Shown here one piece after another: positions 11,534 through 52,458 of a stretch of 64,000 nucleotides of DNA. The stretch lies in the IMG/VR virus record IMGVR_UViG_3300023235_000008, positions 62,001 to 126,000 of that record; one strand, 5' to 3'. Position numbers and translations under genes: made by a program. The notes beneath the pieces were generated by a model. That model was not told where the DNA came from. It saw only the letters and a list, made by a program, of their open reading frames with translations, and searched no databases. Numbering within the stretch: the first letter of the stretch is position 1; each line of letters begins with the position of its first letter.

Positions 11534-12070
11534 ATTTCATTATTACCAGAAAAAATCTTCTATACAGGTGCGCCGGGAAGCAAGTGGAGCGGTGTTGCCC
11601 AGAAGTTCGAGCAGAATCACGGATTTGATACATCGGACAGAACGCCATATAGGCAATACAGCCACGGCAAGTTCAGTGGTCATATAGGTGCATATTTCGG
11701 CACAGGTATGGAGTTTCCAGCCCTTGTAGATGATTGGATTTTAAAGAAGCCGTATTCGGACGAAGGTATTCCATTATTGAAGTCACACGAATGGGTATAT
11801 AAACTACCAGAGATTCAGCGAGTATTCCCCGATGATTGGATTGTCTTTGTGTGGCGAGATTCAGAACAATGTTTTGATTGGTGGAAACAAGCGGGTGGAT
11901 GGAATATTACATATCCGAACTACGATTGGTACGTTAACGACAAACTTATGTATGCACGTATCGAAGAACAGAATCAACTTATGCTGGATTTTGCGGCATT
12001 ACATAATCTAGCGTGGCATCAACAATCTCCAAAAACCGATGATGTATGGGTGGCAGTGTATAAGCCGTGA
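11531..12070 (+). CDS. P-loop/sulfotransferase-like hypothetical protein
   Basis: FYTGAPGSKWS N-terminal loop; LKSH and IVFVWR strands. Confidence 0.45.
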   Translation: MISLLPEKIFYTGAPGSKWSGVAQKFEQNHGFDTSDRTPYRQYSHGKFSGHIGAYFGTGMEFPALVDDWILKKPYSDEGIPLLKSHEWVYKLPEIQRVFPDDWIVFVWRDSEQCFDWWKQAGGWNITYPNYDWYVNDKLMYARIEEQNQLMLDFAALHNLAWHQQSPKTDDVWVAVYKP

Positions 12071-13491
12071 TTATAGCAGCAGCATTAATAGCGGGTATTC
12101 TTTATGGATTTATAGTTGGTATCGTTCCAGCAGCGGGTGCGACCACAGGATTGGTTGCATTGTATGCAGTAATGCCGTTCTTATTGGCTGACCCATATGC
12201 GGGCGTGGTATTCTTAATGGCGGTGGTAGCGGCCTCAACAACCGCCGATAGTTTCACCAGTATCTTATTGGGTATTCCCGGTGCCAATAGTTCAGCAGCC
12301 ACGATGGTTGACGGATTTCCATTAGCACAACAGGGTCGGGCAAGTTATGCCATTTCTGCCGCCGTCACCACATCTACGGTCAACGGATTATTTTGGGGTT
12401 CTATCGTGTTCCTGTTACTTCCTATATACAGTCAAGTCATATTAATCTTTGGTATACCAGAACTATGGGCGTTCACTGTATTGGCATTGGCGACAGTGGG
12501 GTTTCTTTCAACAGACAAGCCACTATTGAGTATAATCGCCATTGGTGCTGGTATCTTCCTTGGATTAGTAGGGGTTGACCCAGCTACCAATGACCCCCGT
12601 TTCACAATGGGATGGTTCTATTTACAAGATGGTATCCAGTTGATTCCAGTGGTGGCAGGATTATTTGCGGTTCCCGAGTTGCTTGAAGGTTTTAAGAAAC
12701 GCCGTGCCACCACAACGGTTGCAAAACGTGAAACTATTGAAGGAATGAAGGCAGTATGGGATAACAAATGGTTATCGATGCGTGGTGGATTTATAGGTGC
12801 GCTTGTTGGATTATTGCCGGGTCTTGGCGGATCGGTCAGTGATTGGTTATCGTATTCACAGGCTGTTGCAAGTAACCCAAATGAAGAGTTTGGTAACGGC
12901 AACATCAAAGGCGTGATTGGACCTGAAGGCTCTAATAATGCACAAAAAGCTACCAGTATGATTCCGACTGTATTGTTCGGTATTCCCGGTGCACCATTCG
13001 CAGCGGTTCTAATGGGATTGTTTGCGTATCTTGGCATAGAGTTGGGTTCACCTGACCTTATGAATGACACACAGTTTTTTCAAAGTATGAGTATCGGTTT
13101 TCTTGCCGCCACCCTAATCGTTGGTATCATTTCATTAATATTCGTTAATACCGTATGCAAAATCACGAGTATTCCATACATATACTATTTTCCGTTGTTA
13201 TTGGTAATGATAGTATGGGCGTGTATGCAATACACGGGTGGATGGGAAGATTTTGCGGTGTTGGCATTCTTTAGTTTTTTTGGAGTGGGTATGAAAAGAT
13301 ATAAATATTCACGACCGGCGTTGTTGGTTGCATTTATTCTAGCAAGCAAAGTAGAAGCATTATCGATACAACTTACAACCCTATACGATTTCACTACCCT
13401 CATAGAAAGACCGCTGTTCTTGATTTTAATGGTTATAATCATTGCGGTGTTCGCATTTAGTTTCAAGAAAGGAAAAATCAAATATGCGTAA
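12067..13491 (+). CDS. tctA: Tripartite tricarboxylate transporter permease (TctA-like)
   Basis: SILLGIPG...AATMVDGFPLAQQG, GPEGSNNA, LFGIPG motifs; polytopic membrane protein. Confidence 0.88.
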   Translation: MIIAAALIAGILYGFIVGIVPAAGATTGLVALYAVMPFLLADPYAGVVFLMAVVAASTTADSFTSILLGIPGANSSAATMVDGFPLAQQGRASYAISAAVTTSTVNGLFWGSIVFLLLPIYSQVILIFGIPELWAFTVLALATVGFLSTDKPLLSIIAIGAGIFLGLVGVDPATNDPRFTMGWFYLQDGIQLIPVVAGLFAVPELLEGFKKRRATTTVAKRETIEGMKAVWDNKWLSMRGGFIGALVGLLPGLGGSVSDWLSYSQAVASNPNEEFGNGNIKGVIGPEGSNNAQKATSMIPTVLFGIPGAPFAAVLMGLFAYLGIELGSPDLMNDTQFFQSMSIGFLAATLIVGIISLIFVNTVCKITSIPYIYYFPLLLVMIVWACMQYTGGWEDFAVLAFFSFFGVGMKRYKYSRPALLVAFILASKVEALSIQLTTLYDFTTLIERPLFLILMVIIIAVFAFSFKKGKIKYA

Positions 13492-18465: not shown

Positions 18466-20766
18466 ATGTTAGAAGAAAATCCAGATATCAACAAGATCAT
18501 TGATGCATCACAAGACTATGCAGCAAAACTAAAGCATCAATATGTTACACTTGAACACCTTTTGTTCGGGTTGATCAAAGACCGAGAGTTTTCAACCATT
18601 CTTGCAGAAGTCAAGGTTGACGTTGAAGGACTTCGTGATGAGTTAGTAACTTATATGCGGGATCGTCCAGAACTTATCAGTCGGCATACAGGCACACCAA
18701 AGCGAACACATGCCCTTGAGCGTGTATTTAACCGTGCCTATACACAAGTGTTGTTCAGTGGTCGAAGCCGTATGGATAGCATTGACCTATATTTGAGCAT
18801 CCTTGCCGAAACCAACTCACACGCCGCATATTATCTTCTTAAATATCTTCCTTCTAAAGACGATATCATGGAAATGTATCAGCCCAAGGACAAAAAGGGC
18901 GCAACAAATAAATCTAAAAAAATGAACGAAACCCAAGCGCAAGAGTTGCTTGAAGAATACTGTAGCAATCTTAACGAGATGGCAGATAACGGAAAGATTG
19001 ATCCCGTTATTGGACGTGATGCCGAACTTGATGATATTGCACAAGTTCTTGCAAGACGCACAAAGTCAAACGTGCTAATGGTCGGTGATCCCGGCGTTGG
19101 TAAGACTGCGATTGCAGAAGGATTGGCATTGAAAATCAACGAAGGCAAAGTGCCTGACTATCTTGTAGGATGGGCGGTGTGGAACCTTGATGTTGGGTCA
19201 TTGCTTGCAGGTTGTAAGTTCCGTGGTGAGTTTGAAGAGAAAATCAAAGAAACCATTGAAGCACTTGAAGCACGTGGCAAGTCAATCTTGTTTATCGACG
19301 AAGCGCACACGATGCGTGGTGCTGGCAATGCTGGCACTGGCGGCGGTCCAGATTTCGCCAATATGCTGAAGCCAGCACTTGGTCGTGGCGGAATCAAGGT
19401 TATTGCATCAACAACATGGGATGAATATACCACATCATTCGAAAAAGACCGTGCTATGATGCGGCGTTTCTATCGTTTGACCGTTGATGAACCAACGCCA
19501 GAAGTTGCCAAGGATATTGTTGCGGCGATTTCGGTATATATTCGTGAACATCATGGCGCAAAGGCTATCAAAAAGGATGCCATCGAAGCGGCGGTTGATT
19601 ATTCCGTTCGTTATCAAGCCGATAAGAAACTTCCCGACAAAGCGATTGATTTGATTGATGCGGCTTGTGCAAAGCAACGGTTGCTTGGTAATAAGAACTT
19701 CGTAATCAAGAAAGTTGATGTATTGACGGAGTTAGCCCGTGCAACGGGTGTTCCAATGAATACAATGGACGATAAAGAAAAGTCCGAGAACTTGCAAAAT
19801 ATTGAAATCAATATCAAAACCAATGTGTTCGGTCAAGATGATTCAGTTGATAAAGTTCTTGATAAAATCTTCGTGGCAAAGGCTGGATTGAAATCACACG
19901 ACAAGCCGATTGGTTCCTTTATGTTTATGGGTCCAACGGGTGTGGGTAAAACCGAGTTGGCGAAACAGCTGTCACGTGAACTTGCAATGAAACTGTTGCG
20001 ATATGATATGAGTGAATATCAAGAGAAACACGCCATTGCACGTTTCGTTGGTGCCCCTGCGGGTTACGTAGGTCACGACGATACACCGGGTCTTTTGATT
20101 AAAGACATCAAAGAAAATCCTAACGCTATCATTCTTTTTGACGAAGTTGAAAAGGCGCACCCTGATGTTCTAAACATCTTGTTGCAAATGATGGACGAAG
20201 GTTATGTCACCAGTGCCAAAGGTCAACGAGCAGATGCACGTAACTGTGTTATCATTTTGACATCAAACTTGGGTGCTGCGGCAAACGAGAAAAACAACAT
20301 CGGCTTCGGATTATCCGGTGCAGCGTTGCAGAAATCAGGTGAAGAAGATAAAGAGTATGAAGCATACTTTGCACCAGAATTCCGTAACCGTGTCGATGCT
20401 GTATGTAAATTCGGCAAGTTATCTAAAATGGCGATGAAAAAGATTGTCAATAAGTTCATGAATGATGTTAATGAACTTCTTAGTGAACGTGATATGAAAA
20501 TTCGTACCACGGATGAACTTGTAGAATACCTTGTAGATAGTGGCTTTGATCCAAAGACGGGTGCACGTCCATTGGCACGTATCATCGATCAAGAAATCAA
20601 AGTCCCGCTTGCCAAGAAGATGCTGTTCGAAAAACTTGACAAAGGTAGCATTATTGTGGTAAACTATAAGGATAAAGAGGTCACATTTGACTTCACAAAT
20701 CCCCTTCCAATTGAAAATTTAGAAAAAGAGGCCATTAATGACCAAGGTATTATCGAAATCGATTAA
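18466..20766 (+). CDS. clpA: ATP-dependent Clp protease ATP-binding subunit (ClpA-like)
   Basis: Clp N domain, two AAA modules (GDPGVGKT, GPTGVGKT), LPDKAIDLID, IGF-like loop (NIGFG). Confidence 0.92.
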   Translation: MLEENPDINKIIDASQDYAAKLKHQYVTLEHLLFGLIKDREFSTILAEVKVDVEGLRDELVTYMRDRPELISRHTGTPKRTHALERVFNRAYTQVLFSGRSRMDSIDLYLSILAETNSHAAYYLLKYLPSKDDIMEMYQPKDKKGATNKSKKMNETQAQELLEEYCSNLNEMADNGKIDPVIGRDAELDDIAQVLARRTKSNVLMVGDPGVGKTAIAEGLALKINEGKVPDYLVGWAVWNLDVGSLLAGCKFRGEFEEKIKETIEALEARGKSILFIDEAHTMRGAGNAGTGGGPDFANMLKPALGRGGIKVIASTTWDEYTTSFEKDRAMMRRFYRLTVDEPTPEVAKDIVAAISVYIREHHGAKAIKKDAIEAAVDYSVRYQADKKLPDKAIDLIDAACAKQRLLGNKNFVIKKVDVLTELARATGVPMNTMDDKEKSENLQNIEINIKTNVFGQDDSVDKVLDKIFVAKAGLKSHDKPIGSFMFMGPTGVGKTELAKQLSRELAMKLLRYDMSEYQEKHAIARFVGAPAGYVGHDDTPGLLIKDIKENPNAIILFDEVEKAHPDVLNILLQMMDEGYVTSAKGQRADARNCVIILTSNLGAAANEKNNIGFGLSGAALQKSGEEDKEYEAYFAPEFRNRVDAVCKFGKLSKMAMKKIVNKFMNDVNELLSERDMKIRTTDELVEYLVDSGFDPKTGARPLARIIDQEIKVPLAKKMLFEKLDKGSIIVVNYKDKEVTFDFTNPLPIENLEKEAINDQGIIEID

Positions 20767-24204: not shown

Positions 24205-24501
24205 ATGAAAATATTACCACGCTATAGAACAGATCAATGGACAAGAGGGGAAGATTTCCCCAACGAGCCGTTTGTGTTTGATGTGCGTAATTGGGACATC
24301 GCTCATACTATGTACCGAATGTTGATGACACCTAAGTTACAACAGGATCGCAATGTAGTCGCAGTATCCTTGCGTGGTATTCCAACCGCTAACGAACTTC
24401 GCTGGTGTGAAAGAGCCGCCAGAAAAGGTAACTTCAGAATAATATGGCTTAGTACAAAAATGAAAGAAACATCAGATGCAGAACTACCTAACAACACTTA
24501 A
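24205..24501 (+). CDS. Hypothetical protein, paralog of 46087..46374
   Basis: Shared [17 protein letters not shown] and [12 protein letters not shown] blocks. Confidence 0.7.
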
Positions 24502-26128
24502 ACACATCATGGACAACGGCGTAGATCGTGGCGATAGAACGGGCACAGGCACACGCTCTGTATTCGCTCACCAGATGCGATTTGATTTGTCAGAAGGCTT
24601 TCCAGCCGTTACAACCAAGAAGCTGGCGTTCAAAGCTGTAAAGAGTGAACTGCTATGGTTCCTAGAAGGGTCTGGTGATGAAAGACGATTAGCTGAAATC
24701 AATGGCACTGAACGCACAATCTGGACTGCTAACGCTGAAGCTGACTATTGGAAACCCAAAGCAAAGTTCGAAGGCGACCTCCAAAAAGTATATGGCTACC
24801 AATGGCGAAAATGGTCAAAATATGATTCTTGGCGAGATTCTGTAACTCTAATAGAACAGGGCACTAAAATTGGTGACGATCAACCATTTTCCTTGGATTT
24901 TGATTTAGAACAAGTAGATTACACAGGTGGTGATGATTTTGTAGGAAAGATTTTTGATACAAATCAATCAGGGCAAATAAAAATTCTTAAAAAACTTGAT
25001 GTGAGAAATGGCAATTCGTATTACCGAGTTCAATTTTTAGAAGGTATCAACACCATCATAGACTGCTCTCGTCCTAACATTCGTTCAAAAACTGTAAAGA
25101 ACCCATATGCCATGACTGCGGCTGAAGGTGCTGGGTGTTATGGAGTAGTCGATAAACGATCAAAATATTTAACATCAGCATATAATATGTGGCTCAATAT
25201 GATGGAGCGGTGTCATGGTGAAAATACTGAGAAGACACTATTTTATAAACAACAAGGTATTTATGTGGATTCTAAGTGGAGATGTTTTAGTAATTTTTAC
25301 AGAGATATTCATGGTTTGGTTGGATTTGACAAATGGGTTATTAACCATTCAAAATATGAATTAGATAAAGATTATTTTGGTAATAAATTTTATGGAATAG
25401 AATCAACTATATTTCTACCTATGTGGTATAATCAATATATTTTACCTAAACATAATAATGATTTGATTATTGCGACCAATAAGAAATCTAATGAAGAATT
25501 CAAATTCACAACACCATCCTTGTTCTATAAACAAAAAGATATTAAAGATACTGATATGGTAAATAGAGCATTCCGTGAACAAAACGGCAATTCTATAAAT
25601 TGGTCATTTAGCAAAAAATCACCGCCAATCGGATATAAATGGAGACAGCAATTTTTTGTAGATCAAATCGCTGATGTCATTGAAAGCATTAAGAATGACC
25701 CTGACAGCCGTAGACATATCGTTACAGCGTATAATCCGGGAGAACTTCAAGATATGGCTCTACCACCGTGTCATATGATCTTTCAATTCTATGTGGCTAA
25801 TGGCAAACTATCATGCCATATGAACCAGCGTTCTTGTGACCTTTTTTTAGGCGTTCCATTCAATATCGCCAGTTATGCTTTACTTACACATATGATTGCT
25901 CAAGTATGCGGGCTTGATGTAGGTGAACTAATCCTGACATTAGGCGATGCTCACATTTATAGCAATCACTTCGATCAAGTCAATGAACAGCTATCACGAG
26001 AACCACAGGATTTACCAACGCTATGGTTGAACCCTGATATTAAAGATATTGATAGTTTCACAATGGATGATATCAAGCTTGAGAACTACAATCCACAGGA
26101 CACTATAAAAGCAAAGATGGCAGTGTGA
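24476..26128 (+). CDS. thyA: Thymidylate synthase ThyA with an in-frame endonuclease insertion
   Basis: DRTGTGT, TTKK, ELLWFL, YGYQWR, DSRR, LPPCH, QRSCD, GDAHIY. It is 550 aa versus ~264 for an ordinary ThyA. Confidence 0.93.
24815..25657 (+). mobile_element. In-frame HNH-like homing endonuclease domain inside thyA
   Basis: W..MMERC...Y...GIYV...W..FSNF...LDKD...NK.Y...T.FLP..YN pattern; visibly AT-richer than its flanks. Confidence 0.7.
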
Positions 26129-35450: not shown

Positions 35451-36506
35451 ATGAGATTAAATGAAATAGCAAACCCAAACTTAGCGCCGGGAATGGCATA
35501 CTGGATTTCACCACGTGGTGAGATATTGGATATTGCTGGTCAAATGCATATTCAGACAGTTATTGAACGTCCTGAGAAGTTCGGGCTAACCAAGGAATAT
35601 ATTGATAAACTTTACGCCGACTTTGATGAGCCTATGGGCACTGAGGGCAAAGCACGTGAACAAATCATTTTGGCACTTGTCAAAAGGGGGTGGATTAGAA
35701 CTCGATTATATCGCAAACAGTATTTCTGGGCAATGAATATCAATCGTATGACTAACGTTACGTATGATAATATAATTAAATGGGCAAAGTATCATACCGA
35801 ACGTACCGATATCGGCAAACAGGCTGGTAACTTCGCTGATGTTAAACTTTCTAAGGGCGATGAAGCAGAAACAAAAGATATCGGTCAACTTATCAAGATT
35901 GCAGATGGTCAGCTAAAAGAAGCATTTATCATTGAAGACGATGGCGGTGAACTTATTACGTTAAGTGTGGTTGAATCAGTTCATGACATGATTGGCGAAT
36001 CGTCACTTGGTCGTATTTTCCAGCATCTTGATAACCCAAATCGTCCCGTAGCGTTTATTACTGCGTTCCGTGGCGGACAGGAAAATCGTCACGAAAATCT
36101 ACGCCGTAACCGCCAACTTGCTGGACAAGTAAAGAAAGCCGGGTATGGATATACGTTTATCGACGGCGGCTGGATTGAAAATCAAGGCACACCCGAAGAA
36201 CAAAAAGTTGAAGAAGATACCGTATTCATCGTCGGAAACGAGAATGATAGTGGTAATCTTAAAGGTCTTGTTAAGAAACTTATGGTACAGTATGATCAAG
36301 ATGGTGTTCTATTCAAACCCGCTGGTGGCAATGAAGTTCATTTGTTATTGAATAGCGGCGAGAACATCAACCTTGGAAAGTTCACGATGGGTACTGCCGA
36401 AGAAGGATATTCACGTATCCGTGGGCGGGAATTCCATTTTGAAAGCACAAGGGAACCACGTAAGAACTGGATTTCCAACATTGCAGCAGCAAAAGGTGTA
36501 AAATGA
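35451..36506 (+). CDS. Two-domain hypothetical protein (MRLNE N-terminus)
   Basis: The YWISP.GEI...H...P.KFG module resembles one in 29476..32871; C-terminal AFITAFR...EN..RN.QL domain. Confidence 0.65.
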   Translation: MRLNEIANPNLAPGMAYWISPRGEILDIAGQMHIQTVIERPEKFGLTKEYIDKLYADFDEPMGTEGKAREQIILALVKRGWIRTRLYRKQYFWAMNINRMTNVTYDNIIKWAKYHTERTDIGKQAGNFADVKLSKGDEAETKDIGQLIKIADGQLKEAFIIEDDGGELITLSVVESVHDMIGESSLGRIFQHLDNPNRPVAFITAFRGGQENRHENLRRNRQLAGQVKKAGYGYTFIDGGWIENQGTPEEQKVEEDTVFIVGNENDSGNLKGLVKKLMVQYDQDGVLFKPAGGNEVHLLLNSGENINLGKFTMGTAEEGYSRIRGREFHFESTREPRKNWISNIAAAKGVK

Positions 36507-36709
36507 AAATATTACCATCAAGTGTTAACATTAACCTTGACAGCCGTGGTGCGGCGATGGCTTATGAAAATCGTAGTCGTAGTGCAATGGCACGTGAATA
36601 TGAATTGGCAAGCATAGAAAAACGCCAATCATATGATGAAACCTACGGTCCAACAGACGTAAGTTCCATCAATGTGACTCGTGGTTTAAAAATTAATATC
36701 TTAGTTTAA
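36503..36709 (+). CDS. Small hypothetical protein ending GLKINILV
   Basis: ATGA-coupled ORF. Confidence 0.5.
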   Translation: MKILPSSVNINLDSRGAAMAYENRSRSAMAREYELASIEKRQSYDETYGPTDVSSINVTRGLKINILV

Positions 36710-37020
36710 TTGTTAGGTATATTCTCTACCATTGCTAGTACCCGCTCATACGCTTGAATACGTGTGGGTGCAGGGAATATTTCACCTTGTGCTGCTTCAA
36801 GCATATCAATCAACTGCTTTGTCGGAAGGCTTTGATAGAATAGCTCTTTTTCACGGCGTTCTTCCGCACGTGCTTCACGGCGTTCCTGTTGTTTTTCATA
36901 CTCAGACTTTTGTTCTTTTTCTTCTTCAGTCTGCGTAACTTCCTCGACAACTTGTGTTACTTTGGGTAATTGTCCGTTGTCCGTGGACAAAGGACGCCCC
37001 GTAATTGTTAGATCATCCAT
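36706..37020 (-). CDS. Hypothetical charged protein downstream of flagellin
   Basis: AGGAG RBS on the minus strand. Confidence 0.6.
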   Translation of the reverse strand: MDDLTITGRPLSTDNGQLPKVTQVVEEVTQTEEEKEQKSEYEKQQERREARAEERREKELFYQSLPTKQLIDMLEAAQGEIFPAPTRIQAYERVLAMVENIPNN

Positions 37021-37031
37021 TTTTATCTCCT

Positions 37032-37060
37032 AAAAAATAGTGGGGGAATTTCACCCCCAC
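37032..37060 (-). terminator. Intrinsic terminator after flagellin
   Basis: Minus strand GTGGGGG-loop-CCCCCAC followed by TTTTTT. Confidence 0.8.
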
Positions 37061-37070
37061 CCATTATCCC

Positions 37071-37903
37071 TTATCTAAAAAGACTAAGGATTGCTTGTTC
37101 AGATTGAACAGCAAGACTCAACGAGTTGTTAGCTAGTGCTTGGCGTGTCTGAAGAGCTAGCAAGTTAGCTGATTCTTCGTTTAGGTCTGCGTTGACCAAG
37201 TTACCAGCGCCTTCTTTGAGGCTGTTAATCATATTAGCTGTGAACTCTTCACGTGACTGAATCAACGCTGCATTTGTACCAAGCGTCTTAGCTGATGTAC
37301 GAACAGTTGACAATGCTGCATCAATCTTTGCGATATCAACATCAATGGCGGTCGTACCAGTTGCTATGGTGGCGTTTTCCCAATCACCAGCGTCGGTTAC
37401 TGCAAGACCAACTTGATCAGAAGCAATACCCGCAACCGTCAATGTTGTTGTGGTTTCGTTTAGCTTCACGGTCAAGCTATCTGGCGTAGCTTTCAGTAGT
37501 CCAACACCATTGAATGTAGCGTCTGCACTGGTGTTGTTGATCTGGTCAAGAATACCATCATATTGTGCTGAGAATGTAGTACGTTCTGCCACGCTTGAAG
37601 ATGCTTTAGCAGATTCAGCAACAGCTTTTGCTTGCTTTAGCAGACCTTCAATGGACTCTAGAGCATCAGTAGCTGTTTGTACAGTAACGATGTTGTTTGC
37701 TAGGTTTTCTTTTACCGTCAATAGATCGGATGCCGACTGCTTAAACCACGTGCAATAAAGAATGATGATGGATTATCAATAACATTGTTGACTTTCTTTC
37801 CTGACGAAAGGCGTCCTTGTGTCATTTCTAAGAGGTTAGTTGTATTTTGTAGTGAGTTTAGGTTACTGCGAATACTCGCAGATAGAGTTACTTCGTTTGA
37901 CAT
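37071..37903 (-). pseudogene. Alphaproteobacterial-type flagellin with a 1-nt deletion
   Basis: N-terminus VTLSASIRSNL..LQ.T..LL..TQ.RLSSGKKVN..DNP and C-terminus ADLNEESANLLALQTRQ.L...SLSLA.QS.Q.IL.LF. Adding one G at 37733-37734 restores SRASDLL and a 277-aa ORF. Confidence 0.88.
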
Positions 37904-37983
37904 TTATATTCTCCTTCTGGATATATGTCTATGTGGCGCTTTCCATTCTTGGAGAGCGTAATGAAACATTCTTGCTTCATTTA

Positions 37984-37990
37984 TATTTAT
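37984..37990 (-). promoter_or_regulatory. Late-type promoter of flagellin
   Basis: GATAAATA on the minus strand ~80 nt upstream of ATG; leader hairpin at 37937-37958; GAAGGAG RBS. Confidence 0.6.
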
Positions 37991-38043
37991 CATTATACGT
38001 GATAAGTATATATTTGTCTATATCTTTTTTTAAAAGAAATATA

Positions 38044-38072
38044 TTGATACAGGGTGCATATGCTGCTATAAT
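38044..38072 (+). promoter_or_regulatory. sigma70-like promoter of the polymerase operon
   Basis: TTGATA-N17-TATAAT. Confidence 0.7.
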
Positions 38073-38095
38073 GGGTAATCATTTAAGGAGATAAT

Positions 38096-38359
38096 ATGAC
38101 TGCTAATAACCGAGTGTTCTCGTCGGAAGAAACAACTAAACTAGACCATCTTATGCGTGAAGGTGTACAAACCCTGCAAGAAGTAGAAGATTTAACAGAA
38201 GGTCTAAACGATACCGTTAAGGCTATCGCTGAAGAACTACAAATCAAACCAGCCGTTTTAAAGAAAGCGATTAAAACCGCACAAAAAGATGATTTCCAAA
38301 ACAAATCGGAAGATCACGACTTGCTCGAAACTATATTGGCTTCAGTAAAACGCATTTAA
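38096..38359 (+). CDS. Small DNA-binding protein (T4 DsbA / GapR-like)
   Basis: EVEDL.EG..D.VK...EEL..KP.VLKKAIK pattern. Confidence 0.5.
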   Translation: MTANNRVFSSEETTKLDHLMREGVQTLQEVEDLTEGLNDTVKAIAEELQIKPAVLKKAIKTAQKDDFQNKSEDHDLLETILASVKRI

Positions 38360-38637
38360 TGATTAAAAATATATGGGCGTTTTGGGTAGAAACGTGGCAC
38401 GACAATAAGCCATTGTTTTGGTGTGAAGCCGTTGCCACAATAGTAAGCGTTATTGCCAGTTTCTTACTGGCGTTTCTAACCCCAACACCACCATTGCTAA
38501 TCATCTTTATCTGCTATCTTGTGGGTAGTGTGCTATTAATGGCAGCAATGTATATGAGAAAAAGCTCGTGGATGTTTGTTCTTATGGGATGGTATTCCTT
38601 AATGAACATCGTGGGCTTATTGAATGCAGCATTTTAG
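38359..38637 (+). CDS. Small membrane protein (3 TM)
   Basis: Three hydrophobic segments. Confidence 0.6.
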   Translation: MIKNIWAFWVETWHDNKPLFWCEAVATIVSVIASFLLAFLTPTPPLLIIFICYLVGSVLLMAAMYMRKSSWMFVLMGWYSLMNIVGLLNAAF

Positions 38638-38646
38638 GAGTGAATA

Positions 38647-40290
38647 TTGAGTTACGTTGACGCAATCTACGATAAACGAAATAACGTTGTTAAGGTAGTT
38701 GAAAGACTGAATGGTAAACGAATAGTAACCGAACATCCGTGTAAATGGACGTTTTATTATGACGATCCAGCTGGAAAGTATAATACTATTTTTCGTAATC
38801 CTGTTTCCAAATTCGAATCTGATAGTAAAAAGGAATTTCATCGTGAGTTGAAAAGTCGTAGTCAGACACGTGTATGGGAAAGTGATATAAATATTGTTAA
38901 TAAGACACTTGAACGTCACTATATTGGGCAGATGTCGCCCAAGCTAAACGTGTGCTTCTTCGATATTGAGGTTGACTTTTCGCCTACGCTTGGTTTTGCG
39001 CCACCCGATGACCCGTTCAATAAAGTAACGGCTATCTCATTATATTGTTCGTGGATGGATGAAATGGTTACGTTAGCTATTCCACCAAATACACTGACGC
39101 TTGAAGAAGCCGAGGCAATGATGGATTTCCCCAACACATACCTATTCAGTAACGAAGGGGATATGATTGAAACGTTCCTTGACTTAATCCAAGAAGCCGA
39201 TGTGCTTACGGGTTGGAACAGTGAAGGCTACGATATTCCGTATATGGTTAACCGAACGGCACGGGTTCTTAGTAAGAATGACACACGCCGTTTCTGTTTA
39301 CTTGACCAACTCCCAAAAGAACGTGAATACGAAAAATATGGCAAGATGCAAAAGACGTATGATTTACGTGGACGTATTCACTTGGATAGCCTATCATTGT
39401 ATCAGCAATATACCTATCACGAAATGCATTCGTATTCGTTGGATACCATTTCTGAATATGAACTAGGTGCCCGTAAAATCCAATACGCAGGATCGCTAGA
39501 TAAGTTATACAATGACGACTTTTATAAGTTCATTGAATACAACCGTCAGGATACTTTGCTATTAAAGCAACTTGATGATAAGCTACAGTTTATTGATCTA
39601 TGCAATGAAATCGCACACGATAATACAGTGCTTATTGCGGCAGCTATGGGTGCCGTTGGTGTTACTGACCAAGCCCTTATCAACTATGCGCATTCACTTG
39701 ATATGGTTGTGCCTAATAAGGTTCATTATGGCGACGACGAAGATCACCGTGCGGCTGGTGCTTATGTGGCGCATCCGAAGAAAGGCACACATAAATGGGT
39801 AGGTGCTATCGATATTAACTCACTATATCCATCGGCTATTCGTGCATTGAATATGAGTCCCGAGACATTTGTAGCACAGTTATTGCCTACACATACACGT
39901 CCGCTTATTGAAAAACGAATGGCTGAAGGCAAGTCGTTTGCAGGAGCATGGGAAGGGTTATTTGGTACACTTGAATATTCCTTTATGGATGATAAAGATG
40001 ATACCACACCACTCAAAGTACAATGGGCAGATGGCAAGCAAACCACACATACTGGCAAGGAAATTAACGATATTATTTTCCATGGTGGTGAAAAATGGGT
40101 AGTAAGCGGTAACGGCACAGTATTTGAGTATAATAAGCAAGGCATCATTCCCGGCATACTTGAAAAATGGTACGCAGAACGCCAAGAACTACAAGCCAAG
40201 AAGAAGGCAGCGGCGGTTATTGATGATTCTACCATAGAAGTACCTAATGATATTATGTCTAAACTTGGAAAGGATTTGATAGACGACTAA
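38647..40290 (+). CDS. Family B DNA polymerase, piece 1 (N-terminus, 3'-5' exonuclease, palm motif A, first finger helix)
   Basis: FFDIEV (ExoI), GWNSEGYDIPY (ExoII), YNRQD (ExoIII), AIDINSLYPS (motif A), GIIPGILEKWY.ER; then a stop. TTG start with AGGAG. Confidence 0.93.
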   Translation: MSYVDAIYDKRNNVVKVVERLNGKRIVTEHPCKWTFYYDDPAGKYNTIFRNPVSKFESDSKKEFHRELKSRSQTRVWESDINIVNKTLERHYIGQMSPKLNVCFFDIEVDFSPTLGFAPPDDPFNKVTAISLYCSWMDEMVTLAIPPNTLTLEEAEAMMDFPNTYLFSNEGDMIETFLDLIQEADVLTGWNSEGYDIPYMVNRTARVLSKNDTRRFCLLDQLPKEREYEKYGKMQKTYDLRGRIHLDSLSLYQQYTYHEMHSYSLDTISEYELGARKIQYAGSLDKLYNDDFYKFIEYNRQDTLLLKQLDDKLQFIDLCNEIAHDNTVLIAAAMGAVGVTDQALINYAHSLDMVVPNKVHYGDDEDHRAAGAYVAHPKKGTHKWVGAIDINSLYPSAIRALNMSPETFVAQLLPTHTRPLIEKRMAEGKSFAGAWEGLFGTLEYSFMDDKDDTTPLKVQWADGKQTTHTGKEINDIIFHGGEKWVVSGNGTVFEYNKQGIIPGILEKWYAERQELQAKKKAAAVIDDSTIEVPNDIMSKLGKDLIDD

Positions 40291-40312
40291 TCTCGTCTTT
40301 TGTCCTAAATAA

Positions 40313-40669
40313 ACCAAACAATATGAGTTTCTAAAAGAGAATGAAGTTGAAAGTCACCATTACCGTTATGACGGGCATTCTGTTAAAAATATAAAGTGCT
40401 ATAAGTATAAAGATTATATTGCTATTGGCGGCAAAAATATGATATCATTATTACAAGAGAATCAAATAGATATTCCAAGAAAATACGTGGATGATATAGA
40501 AATGTCTTTTCCTAAACCTCATCACAATATGCGTGAAGATAGGAAAAACTTTTTCGGTGAATATCACGGGAAATGCCTAAAAGATTTAGGTGTTGCCAAA
40601 TATAAACTCACAGAGATAGGAGAATTGAATGGATTTAGTCTCTACAATCCAAGACCTCATCAGCAATAA
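40313..40669 (+). pseudogene. Start-less degenerate ORF between PolB pieces (possible homing endonuclease remnant)
   Basis: Open frame of ~118 codons with no start near its 5' end; AT-rich; no motif firmly recognised. Confidence 0.3.
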
Positions 40670-41582
40670 CGAAACTGAAAAGTTAGAACAAGTGATGAGA
40701 GAAAACGATTTGGTTGTAAGAAACGGCAAGATTGAAAACAAAGATAGGGGTGCAGTAGCATTCCGGGATAAGCGGCAGTTGGTCAAAAAGATCAACTTGA
40801 ATTCGTAAATATTGCGACTTTATATAGTAATATATAATGAAAAACTCCTCTAACTGCGGGGAACTCTCACCGAGACAATCCGCAGCCAAGCCCGTAAGGG
40901 AAGGTTCAACGACTATGCGAAAGCAGTAGTATCAAGTGATACGAAACGGGGAGCAACCTTCAAGGTTGGTGATATAGTCTAATCTGTATGGCGACATACA
41001 GCAGTTCATGAGAGAACGCACATAAACTAACGACTTATGTGGAATATAAATGTGTATGGTGCTGTATTGAATAAGCATTGTCGTTTCTACGTCTTTGATA
41101 TCGGACAGTCAACCACACTAACTGGTCGGTGTATTGCAAAGCATATGTCAGCATACGTGAATCAATCACTGGCGGGTGAATACGATCATACTGGAAAAAG
41201 TATTGTGTATGGCGACACAGACTCAGAATTTGCCGAAACCATACACAAGACCAATTGGGGTGAGCTTACCGTAGAAGAATTGTTCAACCGAGGGCAGCGT
41301 TATTGGAATGATGCCAAGGATGATACAAAGGAATATAGTGCTAACGATGATTTGAAGGTTCTTTCGTATAACCCGGAAGAAGGCAAAGCGTATTACGGGC
41401 ACATCAATTATATCTACAGGCATAAGGTATCTAAAGAACAATGGGAAATTGAGGATCAATATGGTAATACCATTCGTGTAACTGGCGATCACTCAGTTAT
41501 GGTTGAGAGAGATGGCGTATTGATGGAAATAAAACCACGAGATATATTGAAGGATGATTTACTTATTACTACTACTGAATAA
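40629..41582 (+). CDS. Family B DNA polymerase, piece 2 (spliced 40629-40806 + 41053-41582): second finger helix, motif B, YGDTD, IntN
   Basis: ATG at 40629 after AGGAG. Splicing restores DKRQLVKKINLNSLYGAVLN. The spliced length is 708 nt, giving 235 aa. Confidence 0.85.
40807..41052 (+). mobile_element. ORF-less group I intron (246 nt) in PolB motif B
   Basis: P AACTGCGGGGAA, Q AATCCGCAGC, R GTTCAACGACTA, S GATATAGTCT. The exon ends in U pairing U.G with IGS GCGACTT, and the intron ends in G. Confidence 0.9.
41223..41579 (+). mobile_element. Split intein N-fragment (119 aa, Ser1, no Cys)
   Basis: Follows YGDTD; block B TGDHSVMV; stops at 41580-41582. Confidence 0.88.
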
Positions 41583-41701
41583 GGTCTTCATCATATGCTA
41601 CCAATAATGGATACGAGGTATTTGTTATCTGGGAAAATGATTGGTATCACGACCAATATACTATTATACAACGAGTAAAGGAATGGTGGAATGGAAGTTA
41701 A
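41583..41701 (+). pseudogene. C-terminal remnant of a Vsr-like (EDxHD-type) endonuclease between the intein halves
   Basis: Reads SYATNNGYEVFVIWENDWYHDQYTIIQRVKEWWNGS* with no start. Confidence 0.55.
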
Positions 41702-41822
41702 AAAAGCTAAAGTAAAATCTGTCAAACAGTTAGACAACTTTGATGATGAATATGTCTATGACATAGGCATGAAGAATGAAGAGCATCCATGGTTCTTCGG
41801 CAACAACATTCTCGTTCATAAC
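41691..41822 (+). mobile_element. Split intein C-fragment (44 aa, His-Asn, +1 Ser, no Cys)
   Basis: Block F YVYDIGM and block G NNILVHN/S. Confidence 0.9.
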
Positions 41823-42680
41823 AGCGTGTATTTTTCAATGTGGCCAGTTATCGAAGATGCGGTTAATAATGGTGAAATGGAATGGTCGAAAAAAATCTGC
41901 ACCGAAGTATACGATCAGGTGTCGGAAGCCGTAAATGAATCGTTTCCTCCGTTTATGAAGAAAGCATTTAACTGTCCGCAACATATGGGCGAAATCATTG
42001 AAGGTGGCCGAGAACTTATCGCAACAAAAGGATTGTTCATAAAGAAGAAGCGGTATGGTCTTATGATTTATGACGACGAAGGAACACGCCGTGATGTTGA
42101 TGGCAAAGAGGGCAAAGTCAAAGCTATGGGCTTGGACTTGAAGCGTTCGGATACGCCGGGGTATATGCAAGAATTTCTTATGGAAATCCTTATCGATGTG
42201 TTAACAGACAAAGAAGAAGATGAAATCATTGGTAAGATTTTTGACTTCAAAAAAGAGTTTGTAGAACGTCCGCCTTGGGAAAAAGGTACGCCAAAACGTG
42301 TGAACAACCTTACCAAGTACACCAAGATGTATGAAAATAAGGGCATGAAAGGCGTAATGATTCCCGGTCACGTATCGGCAGCTATTCATTGGAATAAGTT
42401 AAAAAAGTTCTATTCTGATAACTATTCAATGGATATTCAAGACGGTCAAAAGACTATTGTGTGTAAGTTAAAGAATAATCCGCTTGGATATACGAGCATC
42501 GGGTATCCGATTGATGAACCACATATTCCAGACTGGTTTAAGGATTTGCCGTTTGATAACGAGTTAATGCTTGCAACTATTGTGGATCAAAAAATTAAAA
42601 ACTTGCTTGGTGTTATGAAGTGGGATTTGGATACTAAAACAGACGTTACTTCGACTTTTAATACACTATTTGATGTATAG
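41691..42680 (+). CDS. Family B DNA polymerase, piece 3: IntC (44 aa) plus remaining palm and thumb
   Basis: VYDIGM..HPWFFGNNILVHN|SVYF; KKKRYG, KAMGLDLKRSDTP, KGTPKRVN. Confidence 0.92.
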   Translation: MEVKKAKVKSVKQLDNFDDEYVYDIGMKNEEHPWFFGNNILVHNSVYFSMWPVIEDAVNNGEMEWSKKICTEVYDQVSEAVNESFPPFMKKAFNCPQHMGEIIEGGRELIATKGLFIKKKRYGLMIYDDEGTRRDVDGKEGKVKAMGLDLKRSDTPGYMQEFLMEILIDVLTDKEEDEIIGKIFDFKKEFVERPPWEKGTPKRVNNLTKYTKMYENKGMKGVMIPGHVSAAIHWNKLKKFYSDNYSMDIQDGQKTIVCKLKNNPLGYTSIGYPIDEPHIPDWFKDLPFDNELMLATIVDQKIKNLLGVMKWDLDTKTDVTSTFNTLFDV

Positions 42681-50826: not shown

Positions 50827-52458
50827 ATGAGAGCAAAACAGTTTTTAACCGAATATTATAACTATGATATTGAAAAGATGCAAAGCCGTCTTCTTCAAGA
50901 TAATTCTGCCGAACATTACGCAGACGAGTTTAGCAACTATTATAACTTTGCTAACCAATTGCCCGAATGGCTATCCCAATATGACCCAACACAGAATAAC
51001 AAGTACGTGAACTGGATGCTGGTAAAGTATCTCAAAGGCGGTATTCAACGTCTAGAAGATATTCCAGCAAAGATCGCCGATGCATTGGAATTATATTCTC
51101 GCTTGGCATTGAAAAAGAAGCTTGAGCCATTACATCGTGACATCAACCGTTTCAAAGGAACGAATGATTTACTTGATGTGTATGATTTTTACAAAGAGAA
51201 ATATGCTGATCAAGAGGATGATATTTCGGCGTCTAAGCAAGATAAAGCTAAGAGCATTGAACAGGAAATGATTGACAATAAGGAAGTTCATATTCTTCAT
51301 AACGATGCTGAATACAAAGTAGTCATTCCAGTTACCCATCGTGCAAGTTGTTACTTTGGTAAGAATACTCGTTGGTGTACCACTTCTGAAAACTCACCAA
51401 TGTATCACGATATGTATTCCAAAGATGGTCCGTTGGTTGTTATTCTACACAAACCATCTAACTCACGCTGGCAGTTCCACTATCCAACAAAACAGTATAT
51501 GGATGAACAAGACAGTCAAATAAACCTACAAGACTTCTTTGTAGAACACCCAAAAATGGTGAAACTGTTTATGAAGATGGGTCAAAAAGATGAAAGCGGT
51601 ATGGTTGAATCTCTTGGTGATGGGTTAGTATTGTTATTCGGCTCAGTGGTTGCAAGAGAAACAGGTGAATTAGTTAATTTATCTGATCTAAGTGATATAG
51701 CACCAGAAGCATTGCCAAAAATTATCAATGCGAAGATTGCCGAAACAGGCTACGACATCTTAGATATTCGTGATGGTAATGTTATTATTAATAAATGGAA
51801 AGATATTACTGAGTTTGCAAGTGAGTTGCAAGATATTACGGGTGAATGGCACGGCAGAGATAACCCTTCAATTTTTTGGGGATTGAAGGAGCTTGAAGAA
51901 CCGGAAATGGCTGATTTCCACGATTCAGACGTGGATGGTTTCTTTGCCTACCATACAAATCCTAAACTTGATAAAGTTATGGAAAAAGCAATGAAAGCTG
52001 AGTTAGATAATCTTGGTGTAGAATATGAAGAAGATGAATCTAATTCTGGTCTATATGATATTCTCCAATCAGAAGCAAGTTGGGATAGTGAAGTATTCTT
52101 GGCAATTAATAATGGTATCCGTTATGGGGAAGAGACTGGTCGCTATAAGGAACTATCATCAGATGTATGGAGTGCTATTGATGAAGTTGCTACGTCATAC
52201 GGTGGTCACGTTATATTCTATGGTGGCCAACCAGCATTTGACACCGAAGTATTCCTTGTTGCGCCATTGAACGACTTTATGCAAGAAATGAATTCTGAAT
52301 ATTTTGAAGAAAACTTGGGATACAGTGGATGGCTCAATGAAGAATTCCTTGAACGTGGCGCTGGTTTTGTCGAACAACCAAGATATGGATGGTCTGGTTT
52401 TGATGAAGACTCTGCCAATCAGCATATTATGTCAGAACTTGGAGCCTACGCAAAATAA
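50827..52458 (+). CDS. Large acidic phage protein, paralog of 632..2326
   Basis: MRAKQFLTE N-terminus; shared N-terminal domain blocks; ATAAATA 4 nt upstream. Confidence 0.78.
   Translation: MRAKQFLTEYYNYDIEKMQSRLLQDNSAEHYADEFSNYYNFANQLPEWLSQYDPTQNNKYVNWMLVKYLKGGIQRLEDIPAKIADALELYSRLALKKKLEPLHRDINRFKGTNDLLDVYDFYKEKYADQEDDISASKQDKAKSIEQEMIDNKEVHILHNDAEYKVVIPVTHRASCYFGKNTRWCTTSENSPMYHDMYSKDGPLVVILHKPSNSRWQFHYPTKQYMDEQDSQINLQDFFVEHPKMVKLFMKMGQKDESGMVESLGDGLVLLFGSVVARETGELVNLSDLSDIAPEALPKIINAKIAETGYDILDIRDGNVIINKWKDITEFASELQDITGEWHGRDNPSIFWGLKELEEPEMADFHDSDVDGFFAYHTNPKLDKVMEKAMKAELDNLGVEYEEDESNSGLYDILQSEASWDSEVFLAINNGIRYGEETGRYKELSSDVWSAIDEVATSYGGHVIFYGGQPAFDTEVFLVAPLNDFMQEMNSEYFEENLGYSGWLNEEFLERGAGFVEQPRYGWSGFDEDSANQHIMSELGAYAK

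What the first reader, a model, noticed from the sequence alone, without database searches (positions are those of the whole stretch)
37071..37990. Phage-encoded flagellin with a late promoter, structured leader and its own terminator
Seen: a full-length alphaproteobacterial-type flagellin (277 aa after restoring one G in CGG-GCA, giving SRASDL). It has ATAAATA upstream like other late genes, a 5' hairpin, a strong RBS and an intrinsic terminator. Its codon style resembles the phage genes and it lies between phage genes, so it is not a host contig fragment. Inference: a phage flagellin could be exported into the host filament to alter motility, block flagellotropic competitors, or act as a virion or decoy protein. 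Flagellins are not a recognised phage auxiliary gene to my knowledge. The single 1-nt lesion implies very recent inactivation, slippage-based on/off variation, or a read error.
Basis: partly seen in the sequence, partly recalled or inferred. Interest (0 to 1): 0.8.

Follow-up and report, generated by a model that had tools for sequence, protein, structure and literature searches.

The report
Broken flagellin gene in jumbo phage
A giant bacteriophage from a salt lake carries a bacterial-type flagellin gene, switched off here by one missing base. It belongs to a previously undescribed clade of intact flagellin genes kept by T4-like and jumbo phages, complete with the host-style control hairpins of flagellin mRNA.

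Summary
The gene is real. It lies on the minus strand (37903 to 37071) and encodes a 277-codon, Caulobacter-type D0/D1 flagellin split by a 1-nt deletion at 37733/37734. The same break is present in every copy found: IMG/VR and JGI contigs, and three further Logan assemblies that span the site. It is therefore neither a read error nor a chimera.

All 55 invariant positions of its clade are kept, so the inactivation looks recent. No slippery site supports recoding.

Sixteen intact relatives (51-76% identical) form one clade (support 95/95) apart from alphaproteobacterial flagellins. All nine whose neighbourhoods I examined lie among phage genes. One is followed by FlbT and FlaF, the flagellin regulator and chaperone.

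The structured leader and terminator are confirmed. The "late promoter" is not supported: ATAAATA occurs at chance frequency, and a sigma-70-like promoter (11 of 12) fits better.

The leader carries AGAA-loop hairpins that also mark Rhodospirillaceae flagellin leaders. A model built from bacterial leaders alone hits one phage relative at E = 2e-12.

Likely function in intact relatives, inferred only: a flagellin exported into the host filament under the host's FlbT/FlaF checkpoint.

Prophage flagellins (FliCP-TldR) are already known, so this is a new variant rather than a new kind.

The parts
37992..38020 (-). Sigma-70-type promoter TAGACA-17 nt-TATAAT (11 of 12 consensus positions). It is divergent from a + strand promoter at 38044..38072 that serves the gene at 38096.
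   Evidence: sequence read
37984..37990 (-). ATAAATA, read in context as GATAAATA (7 of 8 of the T4 late consensus TATAAATA), directly after the -10 box. It is not enriched in the window.
   Evidence: relatives L004, L008 and L091 have an exact TATAAATA upstream
37960..37981 (-). Leader hairpin 1: 9-bp stem with an AGAA tetraloop (AAUGAAGCA-AGAA-UGUUUCAUU).
37937..37958 (-). Leader hairpin 2: inner stem UCCA-AGAA-UGGA inside an outer GC stem. It also has an AGAA loop.
37904..37921 (-). UCC-AGAA-GGA mini-hairpin, whose 3' arm is the Shine-Dalgarno GGAG (37914..37911), followed by a 7-nt spacer to the ATG.
   Evidence: same arrangement (UCCU-AGAAn-AGGA) in bacterial flagellin leaders
37718..37903 (-). 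N-terminal piece of the flagellin: 57 flagellin codons, then 4 out-of-frame codons and TGA.
37733..37734 (-). Site of the 1-nt deletion (-1 frame change) between the Arg57 codon CGG and the GCA of the ASDL motif.
   Evidence: same sequence in all other assemblies
37071..37732 (-). C-terminal 220 codons of the flagellin in the -1 frame, plus stop. ORF-listing runs 37071..37721 from an internal TTG.
37030..37061 (-). Intrinsic terminator: GGTGGGGG-TGAAATT-CCCCCACT followed by ATTTTTT, 9 nt after the stop codon.
   Evidence: a GC-rich hairpin follows the stop in most of the seven relatives folded

Best explanation
This is a flagellin gene resident in a jumbo phage genome of at least 230 kb. It is a self-contained unit with its own promoter, a leader carrying AGAA-loop hairpins, an RBS, a 277-codon D0/D1-only flagellin of the Caulobacter/Rhodospirillaceae type, and its own terminator. 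It sits divergently next to the DNA polymerase genes.

In this phage population the gene is a recent pseudogene. One base is lost at 37733/37734, and nothing else has decayed.

It belongs to a single clade of flagellins carried by T4-like and jumbo phages. The other 16 clade members are intact and under purifying selection.

The following is inferred, not shown. In the intact relatives the protein is made during infection from an mRNA that keeps the host's flagellin-specific translational control element. It is handed to the host flagellar export apparatus through the FlaF/FlbT pathway and built into the filament. This would keep up or change the filament (motility of the infected cell, or a filament surface that flagellum-binding competitors no longer recognise). 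That would be a lytic-phage counterpart of the FliCP filament swap of temperate phages.

My confidence differs by step: about 0.9 that this is a real phage gene and a real recent frameshift, about 0.85 that the phage clade exists, and about 0.4-0.5 for export into the filament as the function.
For: Identity. Pfam Flagellin_N and Flagellin_C match the two pieces. The clade profile aligns end to end with Caulobacter FljK/L/M/N (E = 5e-47). A model of the closest intact relative finds the FljK filament first (probability 1.00, 35% identity).

Phage residence. PolB is 43-45% identical to jumbo phages Phosso and PA5oct. The window also holds a clamp loader, a Lon-like protease, ThyA and an exonuclease. 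The 16-kb context is identical in three IMG/VR contigs.

The break is real. Logan contigs of runs X6, X7 and X8 span it unchanged. L010 carries it too. Both pieces are called as separate genes on 11 and 5 contigs, and there is no intact allele above 76% identity among 5.8 billion protein clusters.

The break is recent. 55 of 55 invariant columns are kept.

The clade. 17 rows form one side of a branch at 95/95 support. Besides the window, nine relatives lie in phage contexts: baseplate and gp53; RNR, PAAR and S21; ClpX and ClpS; gp44/gp62 and RegA; an ORF matching phrog_1221 and two matching a window ORF; PHROG families; T4 RnlA; tail fibre and RIIA. Among 185,579 species genomes nothing bacterial exceeds 52% identity. 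dN/dS is 0.09-0.16. Gene GC tracks each phage's GC.

Link to the host pathway. One phage has FlbT and FlaF right after its flagellin. 50 of 72 of the nearest bacterial loci have FlbT within 4 kb. AGAA-loop hairpins occur on average 1.02 times per bacterial leader against 0.09 in shuffles, are present in all phage leaders, and are rare before other ORFs of the window. A covariance model built from bacterial leaders alone hits phage L013 at 42.9 bits, E = 1.8e-12. FlbT is known to act on the flagellin 5' UTR (PMC3930126, PMC7591256).
Against: No expression, export or filament data exist for any member. The copy in this window cannot make a full-length protein. No FlbT or FlaF gene lies in the window. 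The bacterial-leader model does not hit the window's own leader, which has different spacing and an extra hairpin. That FlbT binds the AGAA hairpins is my inference and has no published support. Seven of the 17 clade rows were not checked for context, and L008, whose DNA was used, had its neighbours left unexamined. Only contigs, not raw reads, could be laid, so a minority intact allele cannot be excluded. Whether the gene is expressed early or late is unresolved. The host is unknown.
Confidence: 0.55

Rival explanations
1. Regulatory decoy rather than building block. The phage flagellin acts like Caulobacter FljJ, binding FlbT as a co-repressor or soaking up the FlaF chaperone. This would shut down or re-time host flagellin synthesis and free resources for phage production. 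Filament incorporation would be incidental.
For: In Caulobacter one flagellin paralogue (FljJ) is the co-repressor that lets FlbT block translation of the other flagellin mRNAs (PMC7591256). One phage relative carries FlbT and FlaF beside its flagellin. The phage leaders carry the same hairpins as host flagellin leaders, so the phage gene sits inside that regulatory circuit.
Against: The whole D0/D1 polymerisation core, both termini included, is conserved end to end against filament-forming flagellins. That is more than a regulator would need, although FljJ also keeps it. Nothing distinguishes FljJ-like from structural paralogues in the data at hand.
Confidence: 0.2
2. The gene still works in this phage despite the break. 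This could be through ribosomal or transcriptional frameshifting, or as two products: a 61-residue N fragment with the export signal, plus a C fragment restarted at the UUG that overlaps the UGA.
For: All other features are intact and no further damage is seen. The break is fixed in all samples, including one with a separate JGI sample code (Ga0075119). The C-frame UUG overlaps the stop codon (UAUUGA).
Against: No X XXY YYZ slippery heptamer and no homopolymer longer than GG lies in the overlap AGC AGU CGG CAU CCG AUC UAU UGA. All 16 relatives are single intact ORFs with no shift. A C fragment without the N-terminal D0 helix would lack the export region of flagellins (established knowledge). 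No RBS precedes the UUG.
Confidence: 0.06
3. Virion or adsorption protein. The flagellin-like protein is a structural part of the particle, for example a fibre that binds or mimics flagella, rather than a host-directed gene.
For: In the closest intact relative the gene directly follows a 914-residue tail-fibre or virion structural gene. Three relatives have an exact T4 late-promoter consensus upstream.
Against: In the window it lies in the replication module behind a sigma-70-type promoter. Neighbourhoods differ in every phage. The host-type flagellin leader and the FlbT/FlaF partners point to the flagellar export route. Loss of the gene is tolerated by this phage.
Confidence: 0.07
4. Artefact: assembly chimera with host DNA, or a sequencing error creating the frameshift.
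For: Metagenomic origin. Depth in the extra runs is only 3-5x, and only contigs could be laid.
Against: The sequence is identical across the break and across both gene borders in three IMG/VR contigs, one further JGI contig, and Logan contigs of several runs. Gene GC matches the phage and not the GC-rich nearest bacteria. The nearest relatives are also in phages.
Confidence: 0.02

Closest known systems
FliCP, the flagellin of TldR-carrying temperate phages of Enterobacter and relatives (Nat Microbiol 2026, PMC13418256; bioRxiv 2023.11.30.569447)
   Same: It is a phage genome carrying its own flagellin with a conserved D0/D1 core. There it is shown to be exported and to replace the host filament, changing motility, immune recognition and possibly phage susceptibility.
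   Different: FliCP sits next to an RNA-guided repressor (TldR) that silences host fliC. It belongs to lambda-like prophages of gammaproteobacteria and has large outer domains (D2-D4). Here there is no TldR-like neighbour and the phages are T4-like or jumbo with replication modules. The flagellin is a 277-residue D0/D1-only alphaproteobacterial type. The regulatory link is a host-type mRNA leader, plus FlbT/FlaF in one relative. The copy in this window is broken.
Caulobacter crescentus flagellins FljJ-FljO with FlbT/FlaF control (PDB 6XKY, 8UXJ, 8UXN and others)
   Same: Same size and architecture, aligned end to end (E = 5e-47, about 35% identity). FlbT and FlaF genes lie next to the nearest bacterial homologues and next to one phage homologue. 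Regulation acts through the 5' UTR.
   Different: Those are chromosomal genes in flagellar loci with sigma-54 or cell-cycle control. The phage genes stand alone among phage genes, with sigma-70-like or T4-late-like promoters and phage-like base composition.
Rhodospirillaceae flagellins (Insolitispirillum peregrinum, Rhodospirillum rubrum, many MAGs)
   Same: They are the nearest cellular relatives (46-52% identity). Their leaders share the AGAA-loop hairpin followed by UCCU-AGAAn-AGGA holding the Shine-Dalgarno sequence.
   Different: They are separated from the phage clade by a branch with 95/95 support. They are GC-rich, and 50 of 72 loci have FlbT within 4 kb.
Phage morons and auxiliary genes that keep a host function running during infection (for example cyanophage psbA; motA/motB reported on a glacier-ice viral contig, PMC8290583)
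   Same: A host structural gene is captured, adapted to phage composition and kept under purifying selection, with its own promoter and terminator.
   Different: No flagellin of this type has been described in virulent-type phages in the literature I could search. A preprint lists FlaA annotations in a Nitrosospira phage without analysis.

Membership tests
Bacterial flagellin (FliC/Fla; Pfam PF00669 + PF00700) | N-terminal helical region (D0/D1) | tested here: met
   The N piece matches PF00669 positions 9-52 (E = 4.9e-5, 23.8 bits). That is below the 26.6-bit cut-off only because the piece stops at residue 57. The rest of D1 continues in the C piece. All 16 relatives carry PF00669.
Bacterial flagellin (FliC/Fla; Pfam PF00669 + PF00700) | C-terminal helical region | tested here: met
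   PF00700 positions 1-86 of 86, 31.9 bits against a cut-off of 23.
Bacterial flagellin (FliC/Fla; Pfam PF00669 + PF00700) | Fold and full-length match to filament-forming flagellins | tested here: met
   The clade profile covers positions 3-276 against residues 5-273 of Caulobacter FljK/M (E about 1e-47). The AlphaFold model of P0002 (pLDDT 74) hits 6XKY first (probability 1.00, TM 0.57-0.59).
Bacterial flagellin (FliC/Fla; Pfam PF00669 + PF00700) | One uninterrupted reading frame | tested here: not met
   The window copy has a -1 frame change at 37733/37734, the same in all assemblies. It is a pseudogene of the family.
Bacterial flagellin (FliC/Fla; Pfam PF00669 + PF00700) | Export by the flagellar type III apparatus and polymerisation into a filament | not testable with these tools
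   This needs expression of an intact relative in a flagellated alphaproteobacterium.
FliCP-TldR prophage flagellin module | Adjacent TnpB-derived TldR gene with guide RNA targeting host fliC | tested here: not met
   The neighbours within about 3.5 kb upstream and 750 bp downstream are a 104-residue ORF with no match, an S-AdoMet-lyase-family protein, a DUF5661 protein, an 87-residue phrog_12534 protein and a 92-residue ORF with no PHROG match. No TnpB-like domain is present. None was seen in the relatives' loci.
FliCP-TldR prophage flagellin module | Carried by a temperate phage or prophage | tested here: inconclusive
   The window is the replication module of a phage of at least 230 kb related to PA5oct and Phosso. 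Relatives have T4-type genes such as gp44/62, RegA, RIIA, RnlA and baseplate. No integrase turned up among the ORFs I scanned, but only 64 kb of the genome was read, and only about 30 of its ORFs were scanned.
FliCP-TldR prophage flagellin module | Flagellin with large surface domains D2-D4 | tested here: not met
   277 residues with a D0/D1 core and a short beta-hairpin insert only.
FlbT/FlaF-controlled alphaproteobacterial flagellin genes | Nearest relatives are flagellins with FlbT/FlaF genes alongside | tested here: met
   50 of 72 nearest bacterial loci have FlbT and 40 have FlaF within 4 kb. Phage relative L091 has both directly downstream. The window itself has neither.
FlbT/FlaF-controlled alphaproteobacterial flagellin genes | Leader RNA shared with those genes (AGAA-loop hairpins, the last one holding the Shine-Dalgarno sequence) | tested here: met
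   The window leader has two AGAA-loop hairpins of at least 4 bp plus UCC-AGAA-GGA at the SD. Enrichment is 1.02 against 0.09 per leader in bacteria. The bacterial-only model hits phage L013 at E = 1.8e-12, but not the window, whose spacing differs.
FlbT/FlaF-controlled alphaproteobacterial flagellin genes | Binding of FlbT to the leader and repression until the hook-basal body is complete | not testable with these tools
   The FlbT recognition motif is listed as undefined in the review PMC4347634. An RNA-binding assay is needed.
T4-type late gene | TATAAATA late promoter at the transcription start | tested here: not met
   The window has GATAAATA (7 of 8). The motif is not enriched. A sigma-70-type promoter scoring 11 of 12 overlaps it. 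Relatives L004, L008 and L091 do have an exact TATAAATA.
Programmed -1 ribosomal frameshift site | Slippery heptamer X XXY YYZ in the overlap, conserved in relatives | tested here: not met
   There is no such heptamer between the last possible shift point and the TGA. Relatives have no shift.

The most novel reading that the evidence does not exclude
Virulent-type T4-like and jumbo phages of alphaproteobacteria have maintained, from a single capture, their own flagellin. It comes with the host's flagellin-mRNA control hairpins and, in at least one phage, its own FlbT regulator and FlaF chaperone. If so, lytic phages plug into the flagellar assembly checkpoint to rebuild or re-regulate the host filament during infection. 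The shared AGAA-loop hairpin would then be the long-undefined RNA element through which FlbT recognises flagellin mRNAs.
Probability: 0.4. Interest if true: 0.75.

Novelty: new variant of a known kind. Interest (0 to 1): 0.62.

Why it matters
Phage-encoded flagellin has so far been shown only for temperate enterobacterial phages, where it comes with an RNA-guided repressor. A second, unrelated clade in large lytic-type phages of aquatic alphaproteobacteria would show that taking over the flagellar filament is a recurrent phage strategy. This clade uses a different regulatory hook: the host's own translational checkpoint.

It also offers natural test material. There are 16 intact alleles, one natural knock-out (this phage) and one phage with the full flagellin-FlbT-FlaF set. 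It also supplies a concrete candidate RNA motif for FlbT, whose target has been undefined since 2000.

For the window itself the practical message is more modest. The gene is a recently dead copy, so this phage does without it.

Tried and rejected
- Megablast of 36000-39000 against GenBank phages found no match.
- tblastn of the C piece against 50,697 GenBank phages found no match at E <= 1e-3. The clade is therefore absent from isolated or deposited phages.
- Two IMG/VR scans, one with the C piece and one with the clade alignment, returned only this phage itself.
- The metagenome scan added only L008 and L010.
- Rfam found no family at the leader or terminator. The three hits at E of 1.3-3.5 are chance.
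- ATAAATA/TATAAATA enrichment as evidence for late promoters was negative.
- Covariance model R1, built from bacterial leaders, did not match the window's own leader.
- FlbT and FlaF searched by tblastn in the window and six phage loci were found only in L091.
- Synteny around the flagellin between phages is absent. Only the clamp loader and a few other genes are shared, at much lower identity than the flagellin.
- The 104-residue ORF downstream (36706..37020) has no Pfam or PHROG match and no counterpart in the other loci. I do not count it as part of the unit.
- Presence of the hairpin is not associated with FlbT adjacency across bacterial loci.
- Read laying could use only Logan contigs, so allele frequencies at the break could not be measured.
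- The ORF at 27064, flagged with two AGAA hairpins upstream, is most likely chance, because the hairpins appear to lie inside upstream coding sequence.
Full report
**1. What is in the sequence**

The feature lies on the minus strand. Reading 38020 down to 37030 gives the following parts, in order:
- A sigma-70-type promoter, TAGACA-17-TATAAT, at 38020..37992 (11 of 12).
- An 83-nt leader.
- GGAG, 7 nt before the ATG at 37903.
- A 61-codon ORF ending at TGA 37720..37718.
- A 216-codon ORF in the -1 frame ending at 37071.
- An 8-bp GC-rich hairpin followed by a T run at 37061..37030.

Pfam places Flagellin_N on the first ORF and Flagellin_C on the second. Alignment with full-length relatives shows that the two ORFs are one flagellin. 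It is interrupted between Arg57 (CGG) and the conserved ASDL. One base is missing from what would be CGG-GCA, at + strand 37733/37734. Read through, the gene has 57 + 220 = 277 codons.

**2. Is the break real, and is the gene really in the phage?**

- Three IMG/VR contigs (121, 142 and 230 kb, three different samples) are 99.99-100% identical to the window over 16 kb and carry the same break.
- A fourth JGI contig, from a sample with a separate code (Ga0075119), also carries it.
- Eighteen 'salt lake metagenome' runs hold the sequence. In four further runs the Logan contigs show no difference. Three of these runs span the break with more than 31 nt on each side. Separate contigs cross each border of the gene into the phage flanks.
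- In the collection of 15 billion proteins both pieces are called as separate genes, on 11 and 5 contigs. No intact allele closer than 76% identity exists.

A read error and a host-phage chimera are therefore excluded as far as contigs allow. Minor alleles could not be measured, because no raw reads were served.

The overlap AGC AGU CGG CAU CCG AUC UAU UGA has no slippery heptamer and no homopolymer longer than two. Relatives show no shift. Programmed recoding is therefore unlikely.

**3. The genome around it**

- PolB (38647-40290) is 43-45% identical to the polymerases of Sinorhizobium phage Phosso and Pseudomonas phage PA5oct.
- The window also holds a T4-type clamp loader, a Lon-like protease, thymidylate synthase, an exonuclease and many ORFs that match PHROG families or nothing.
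- It has no tRNA gene.
- GC is an even 0.36-0.44. The flagellin gene has GC 0.43.

The gene lies in the replication module of a jumbo phage, divergent from the gene cluster that leads into PolB.

**4. Relatives**

The C piece finds 16 unnamed full-length proteins (274-289 residues, 51-75% identical), followed by hundreds of alphaproteobacterial flagellins at 50% identity or less.

I looked up the neighbourhoods of nine of the 16. All are phage-like:
- P0003: baseplate, gp53, SegE and a Rad50-like protein.
- P0007: RNR, PAAR, nuclease, methyltransferase, S21 and HSP20.
- P0004: ClpX, ClpS, S21 and HSP20. This contig was binned into a MAG labelled Enterobacteriaceae.
- P0010: gp44/gp62 clamp loader, RegA and gp49.
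- P0017: one ORF with a PHROG match (phrog_1221), and two that match the window's first ORF.
- P0011: ORFs with PHROG matches.
- P0013: T4 RnlA.
- P0002: tail-fibre or virion protein, M15 peptidase and RIIA.

A careful maximum-likelihood tree puts the window plus these 16 on one side of a branch (95/95) against 40 bacterial representatives. P0042, which fell near the clade in the quick tree, lies in a bacterial flagellar locus and separates in the careful tree.

Among one genome for each of 185,579 species, the only match above 52% identity is the mis-binned phage contig. All the others are Rhodospirillaceae or other Alphaproteobacteria.

Gene neighbourhoods differ in every phage. The flagellin is much more conserved between them than shared replication genes are: 57-60% against 29% for the clamp loader between the window and L013. 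Gene GC follows the GC of each phage locus (0.42-0.54), not that of the GC-rich bacteria. Pairwise dN/dS is 0.09-0.16, with synonymous sites saturated.

So this is an old, selected phage gene family and not repeated fresh captures.

The window copy keeps 55 of 55 invariant and 19 of 21 near-invariant columns. That is no worse than intact members in a leave-one-out test. The frameshift is therefore its only visible damage.

**5. Fold**

The clade profile aligns end to end with Caulobacter FljK/L/M/N (E about 1e-47). An AlphaFold model of P0002 (pLDDT 74) retrieves the FljK filament structures first. These are minimal D0/D1 flagellins with a short beta-hairpin insert.

**6. Promoter, leader and terminator**

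The 'late promoter' is the weakest part of the finding.
- ATAAATA and TATAAATA occur at chance frequency in the window.
- In the window the motif reads GATAAATA and abuts a near-consensus sigma-70 promoter.
- L011 has TTGACT-18-TATAAT, whereas L004, L008 and L091 have an exact TATAAATA upstream.

Timing may therefore differ between phages and stays open here.

The structured leader is confirmed (z = -5.2), and it turned out to be informative. It has two hairpins with AGAA loops and a third small one (UCC-AGAA-GGA) that ties up the Shine-Dalgarno sequence. Every phage relative has the same kind of leader.

So do the nearest bacterial flagellin genes. They have a variable-stem hairpin with (C)AGAA in the loop, followed about 10 nt later by UCCU-AGAAn-AGGA(G).
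- Such hairpins occur 1.02 times per bacterial leader against 0.09 in shuffles.
- All six phage leaders tested have them, five with two copies.
- Before other ORFs of this window they average 0.12, and only one of 84 ORFs has two.

A covariance model built only from 12 bacterial leaders finds the leader of phage L013 exactly in place, at 42.9 bits and E = 1.8e-12. It does not find the window's leader, whose spacing differs. Rfam has nothing there.

A GC-rich hairpin follows the stop codon in most of the seven relatives folded, so the gene travels as an autonomous unit.

**7. Link to FlbT/FlaF**

In L091 the phage flagellin is followed directly by FlbT and FlaF genes. That FlbT is 44% identical to a bacterial one. 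Of the 72 nearest bacterial loci, 50 have FlbT and 40 have FlaF within 4 kb.

From the literature:
- In Caulobacter it does so together with the flagellin FljJ.
- FlaF is the secretion chaperone (PMC3930126, PMC7591256).
- The RNA element FlbT recognises was listed as undefined in a 2015 review (PMC4347634).

That the AGAA hairpins are that element is my inference.

**8. Mechanism**

Shown:
- A phage-resident flagellin family exists. It is conserved, complete, and carries the host-type leader.
- One member has FlbT/FlaF alongside.
- The copy in this window is broken.

Inferred: in intact members the mRNA is subject to the host's flagellin checkpoint, and the protein leaves through the flagellar export gate and enters the filament. 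This would sustain or alter motility or the filament surface during infection.

The main rival is a regulatory decoy of the FljJ type. Lesser rivals are a virion role, residual function of the split gene, and artefact.

**9. What is known**

Prophage flagellin FliCP with TldR is established experimentally. Its authors call it the first known prophage-encoded flagellin. Searches for other phage flagellins found only an annotation list for a Nitrosospira phage and motA/motB on a viral contig.

The present clade differs in phage type, flagellin type and regulatory logic, and it lacks TldR. I therefore rate it a new variant of a known kind. The window's own copy is a pseudogene of that variant.

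**10. Limits**

- The host is unknown.
- There are no expression data.
- Seven clade members were not checked for context. L008's DNA was used, but its neighbours were not examined.
- dS is saturated.
- Contigs hide rare alleles.

Noticed in passing
window 38647-42680 (+), intron at 40789-41001: The family-B DNA polymerase is in three ORFs (38647-40290, 41037-41582, 41691-42680). A group I intron (Rfam RF00028, 105.8 bits, E = 2e-26) lies in the first gap. The second gap, of about 110 nt, is unexplained.
   Followed up: partly
window 24476-26128 (+): The thymidylate synthase ORF of 550 residues matches ThyA in two stretches, with an HNH endonuclease domain (about residues 157-382) between them. 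This looks like an in-frame mobile insertion.
   Followed up: no
window 12067-13491 (+): A phage-borne TctA-family tripartite tricarboxylate transporter large subunit (Pfam PF01970, E = 5.7e-95, full length) with no PHROG match. This is an unusual membrane-transport auxiliary gene for a phage.
   Followed up: no
L091:2764-3502 (+): A T4-like phage contig (Logan ERR7015313) carries FlbT and FlaF genes directly downstream of its flagellin. It is the only phage locus of those examined that has them.
   Followed up: partly
L018-L089 (bacterial flagellin loci), for example L019:3942-3994, L030:3954-4003, L052:3953-4003: Flagellin leaders of Rhodospirillaceae and related Alphaproteobacteria share an apparently undescribed RNA motif. 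It is a hairpin with (C)AGAA in the loop, followed by UCCU-AGAAn-AGGA(G) enclosing the Shine-Dalgarno sequence. It has no Rfam family and is a candidate FlbT target.
   Followed up: partly
L017 / L011 (CAYMPA010000032.1): A 24-kb contig with phage genes (ClpX, ClpS, S21, HSP20, phage-clade flagellin) is binned in a MAG labelled 'uncultured Enterobacteriaceae'. This is probably a binning error.
   Followed up: no
window 35451-36506 (+) and 18466-20766 (+): A 351-residue protein has an S-adenosylmethionine lyase family domain, a possible anti-restriction function. A 766-residue Lon-like ATP-dependent protease (phrog_4871, E = 5e-235) is also present.
   Followed up: no
window 620-2326 (+) and 50827-52458 (+): Two ORFs of about 550 residues each match the same PHROGs of unknown function (phrog_17056, phrog_28193). 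They are probably paralogues 50 kb apart.
   Followed up: no
window 38044-38072 (+): A second near-consensus sigma-70 promoter (TTGATA-17-TATAAT with an extended TG) faces away from the flagellin promoter. It drives an 87-residue phrog_12534 protein with a weaker match to a transcriptional-regulator PHROG.
   Followed up: no
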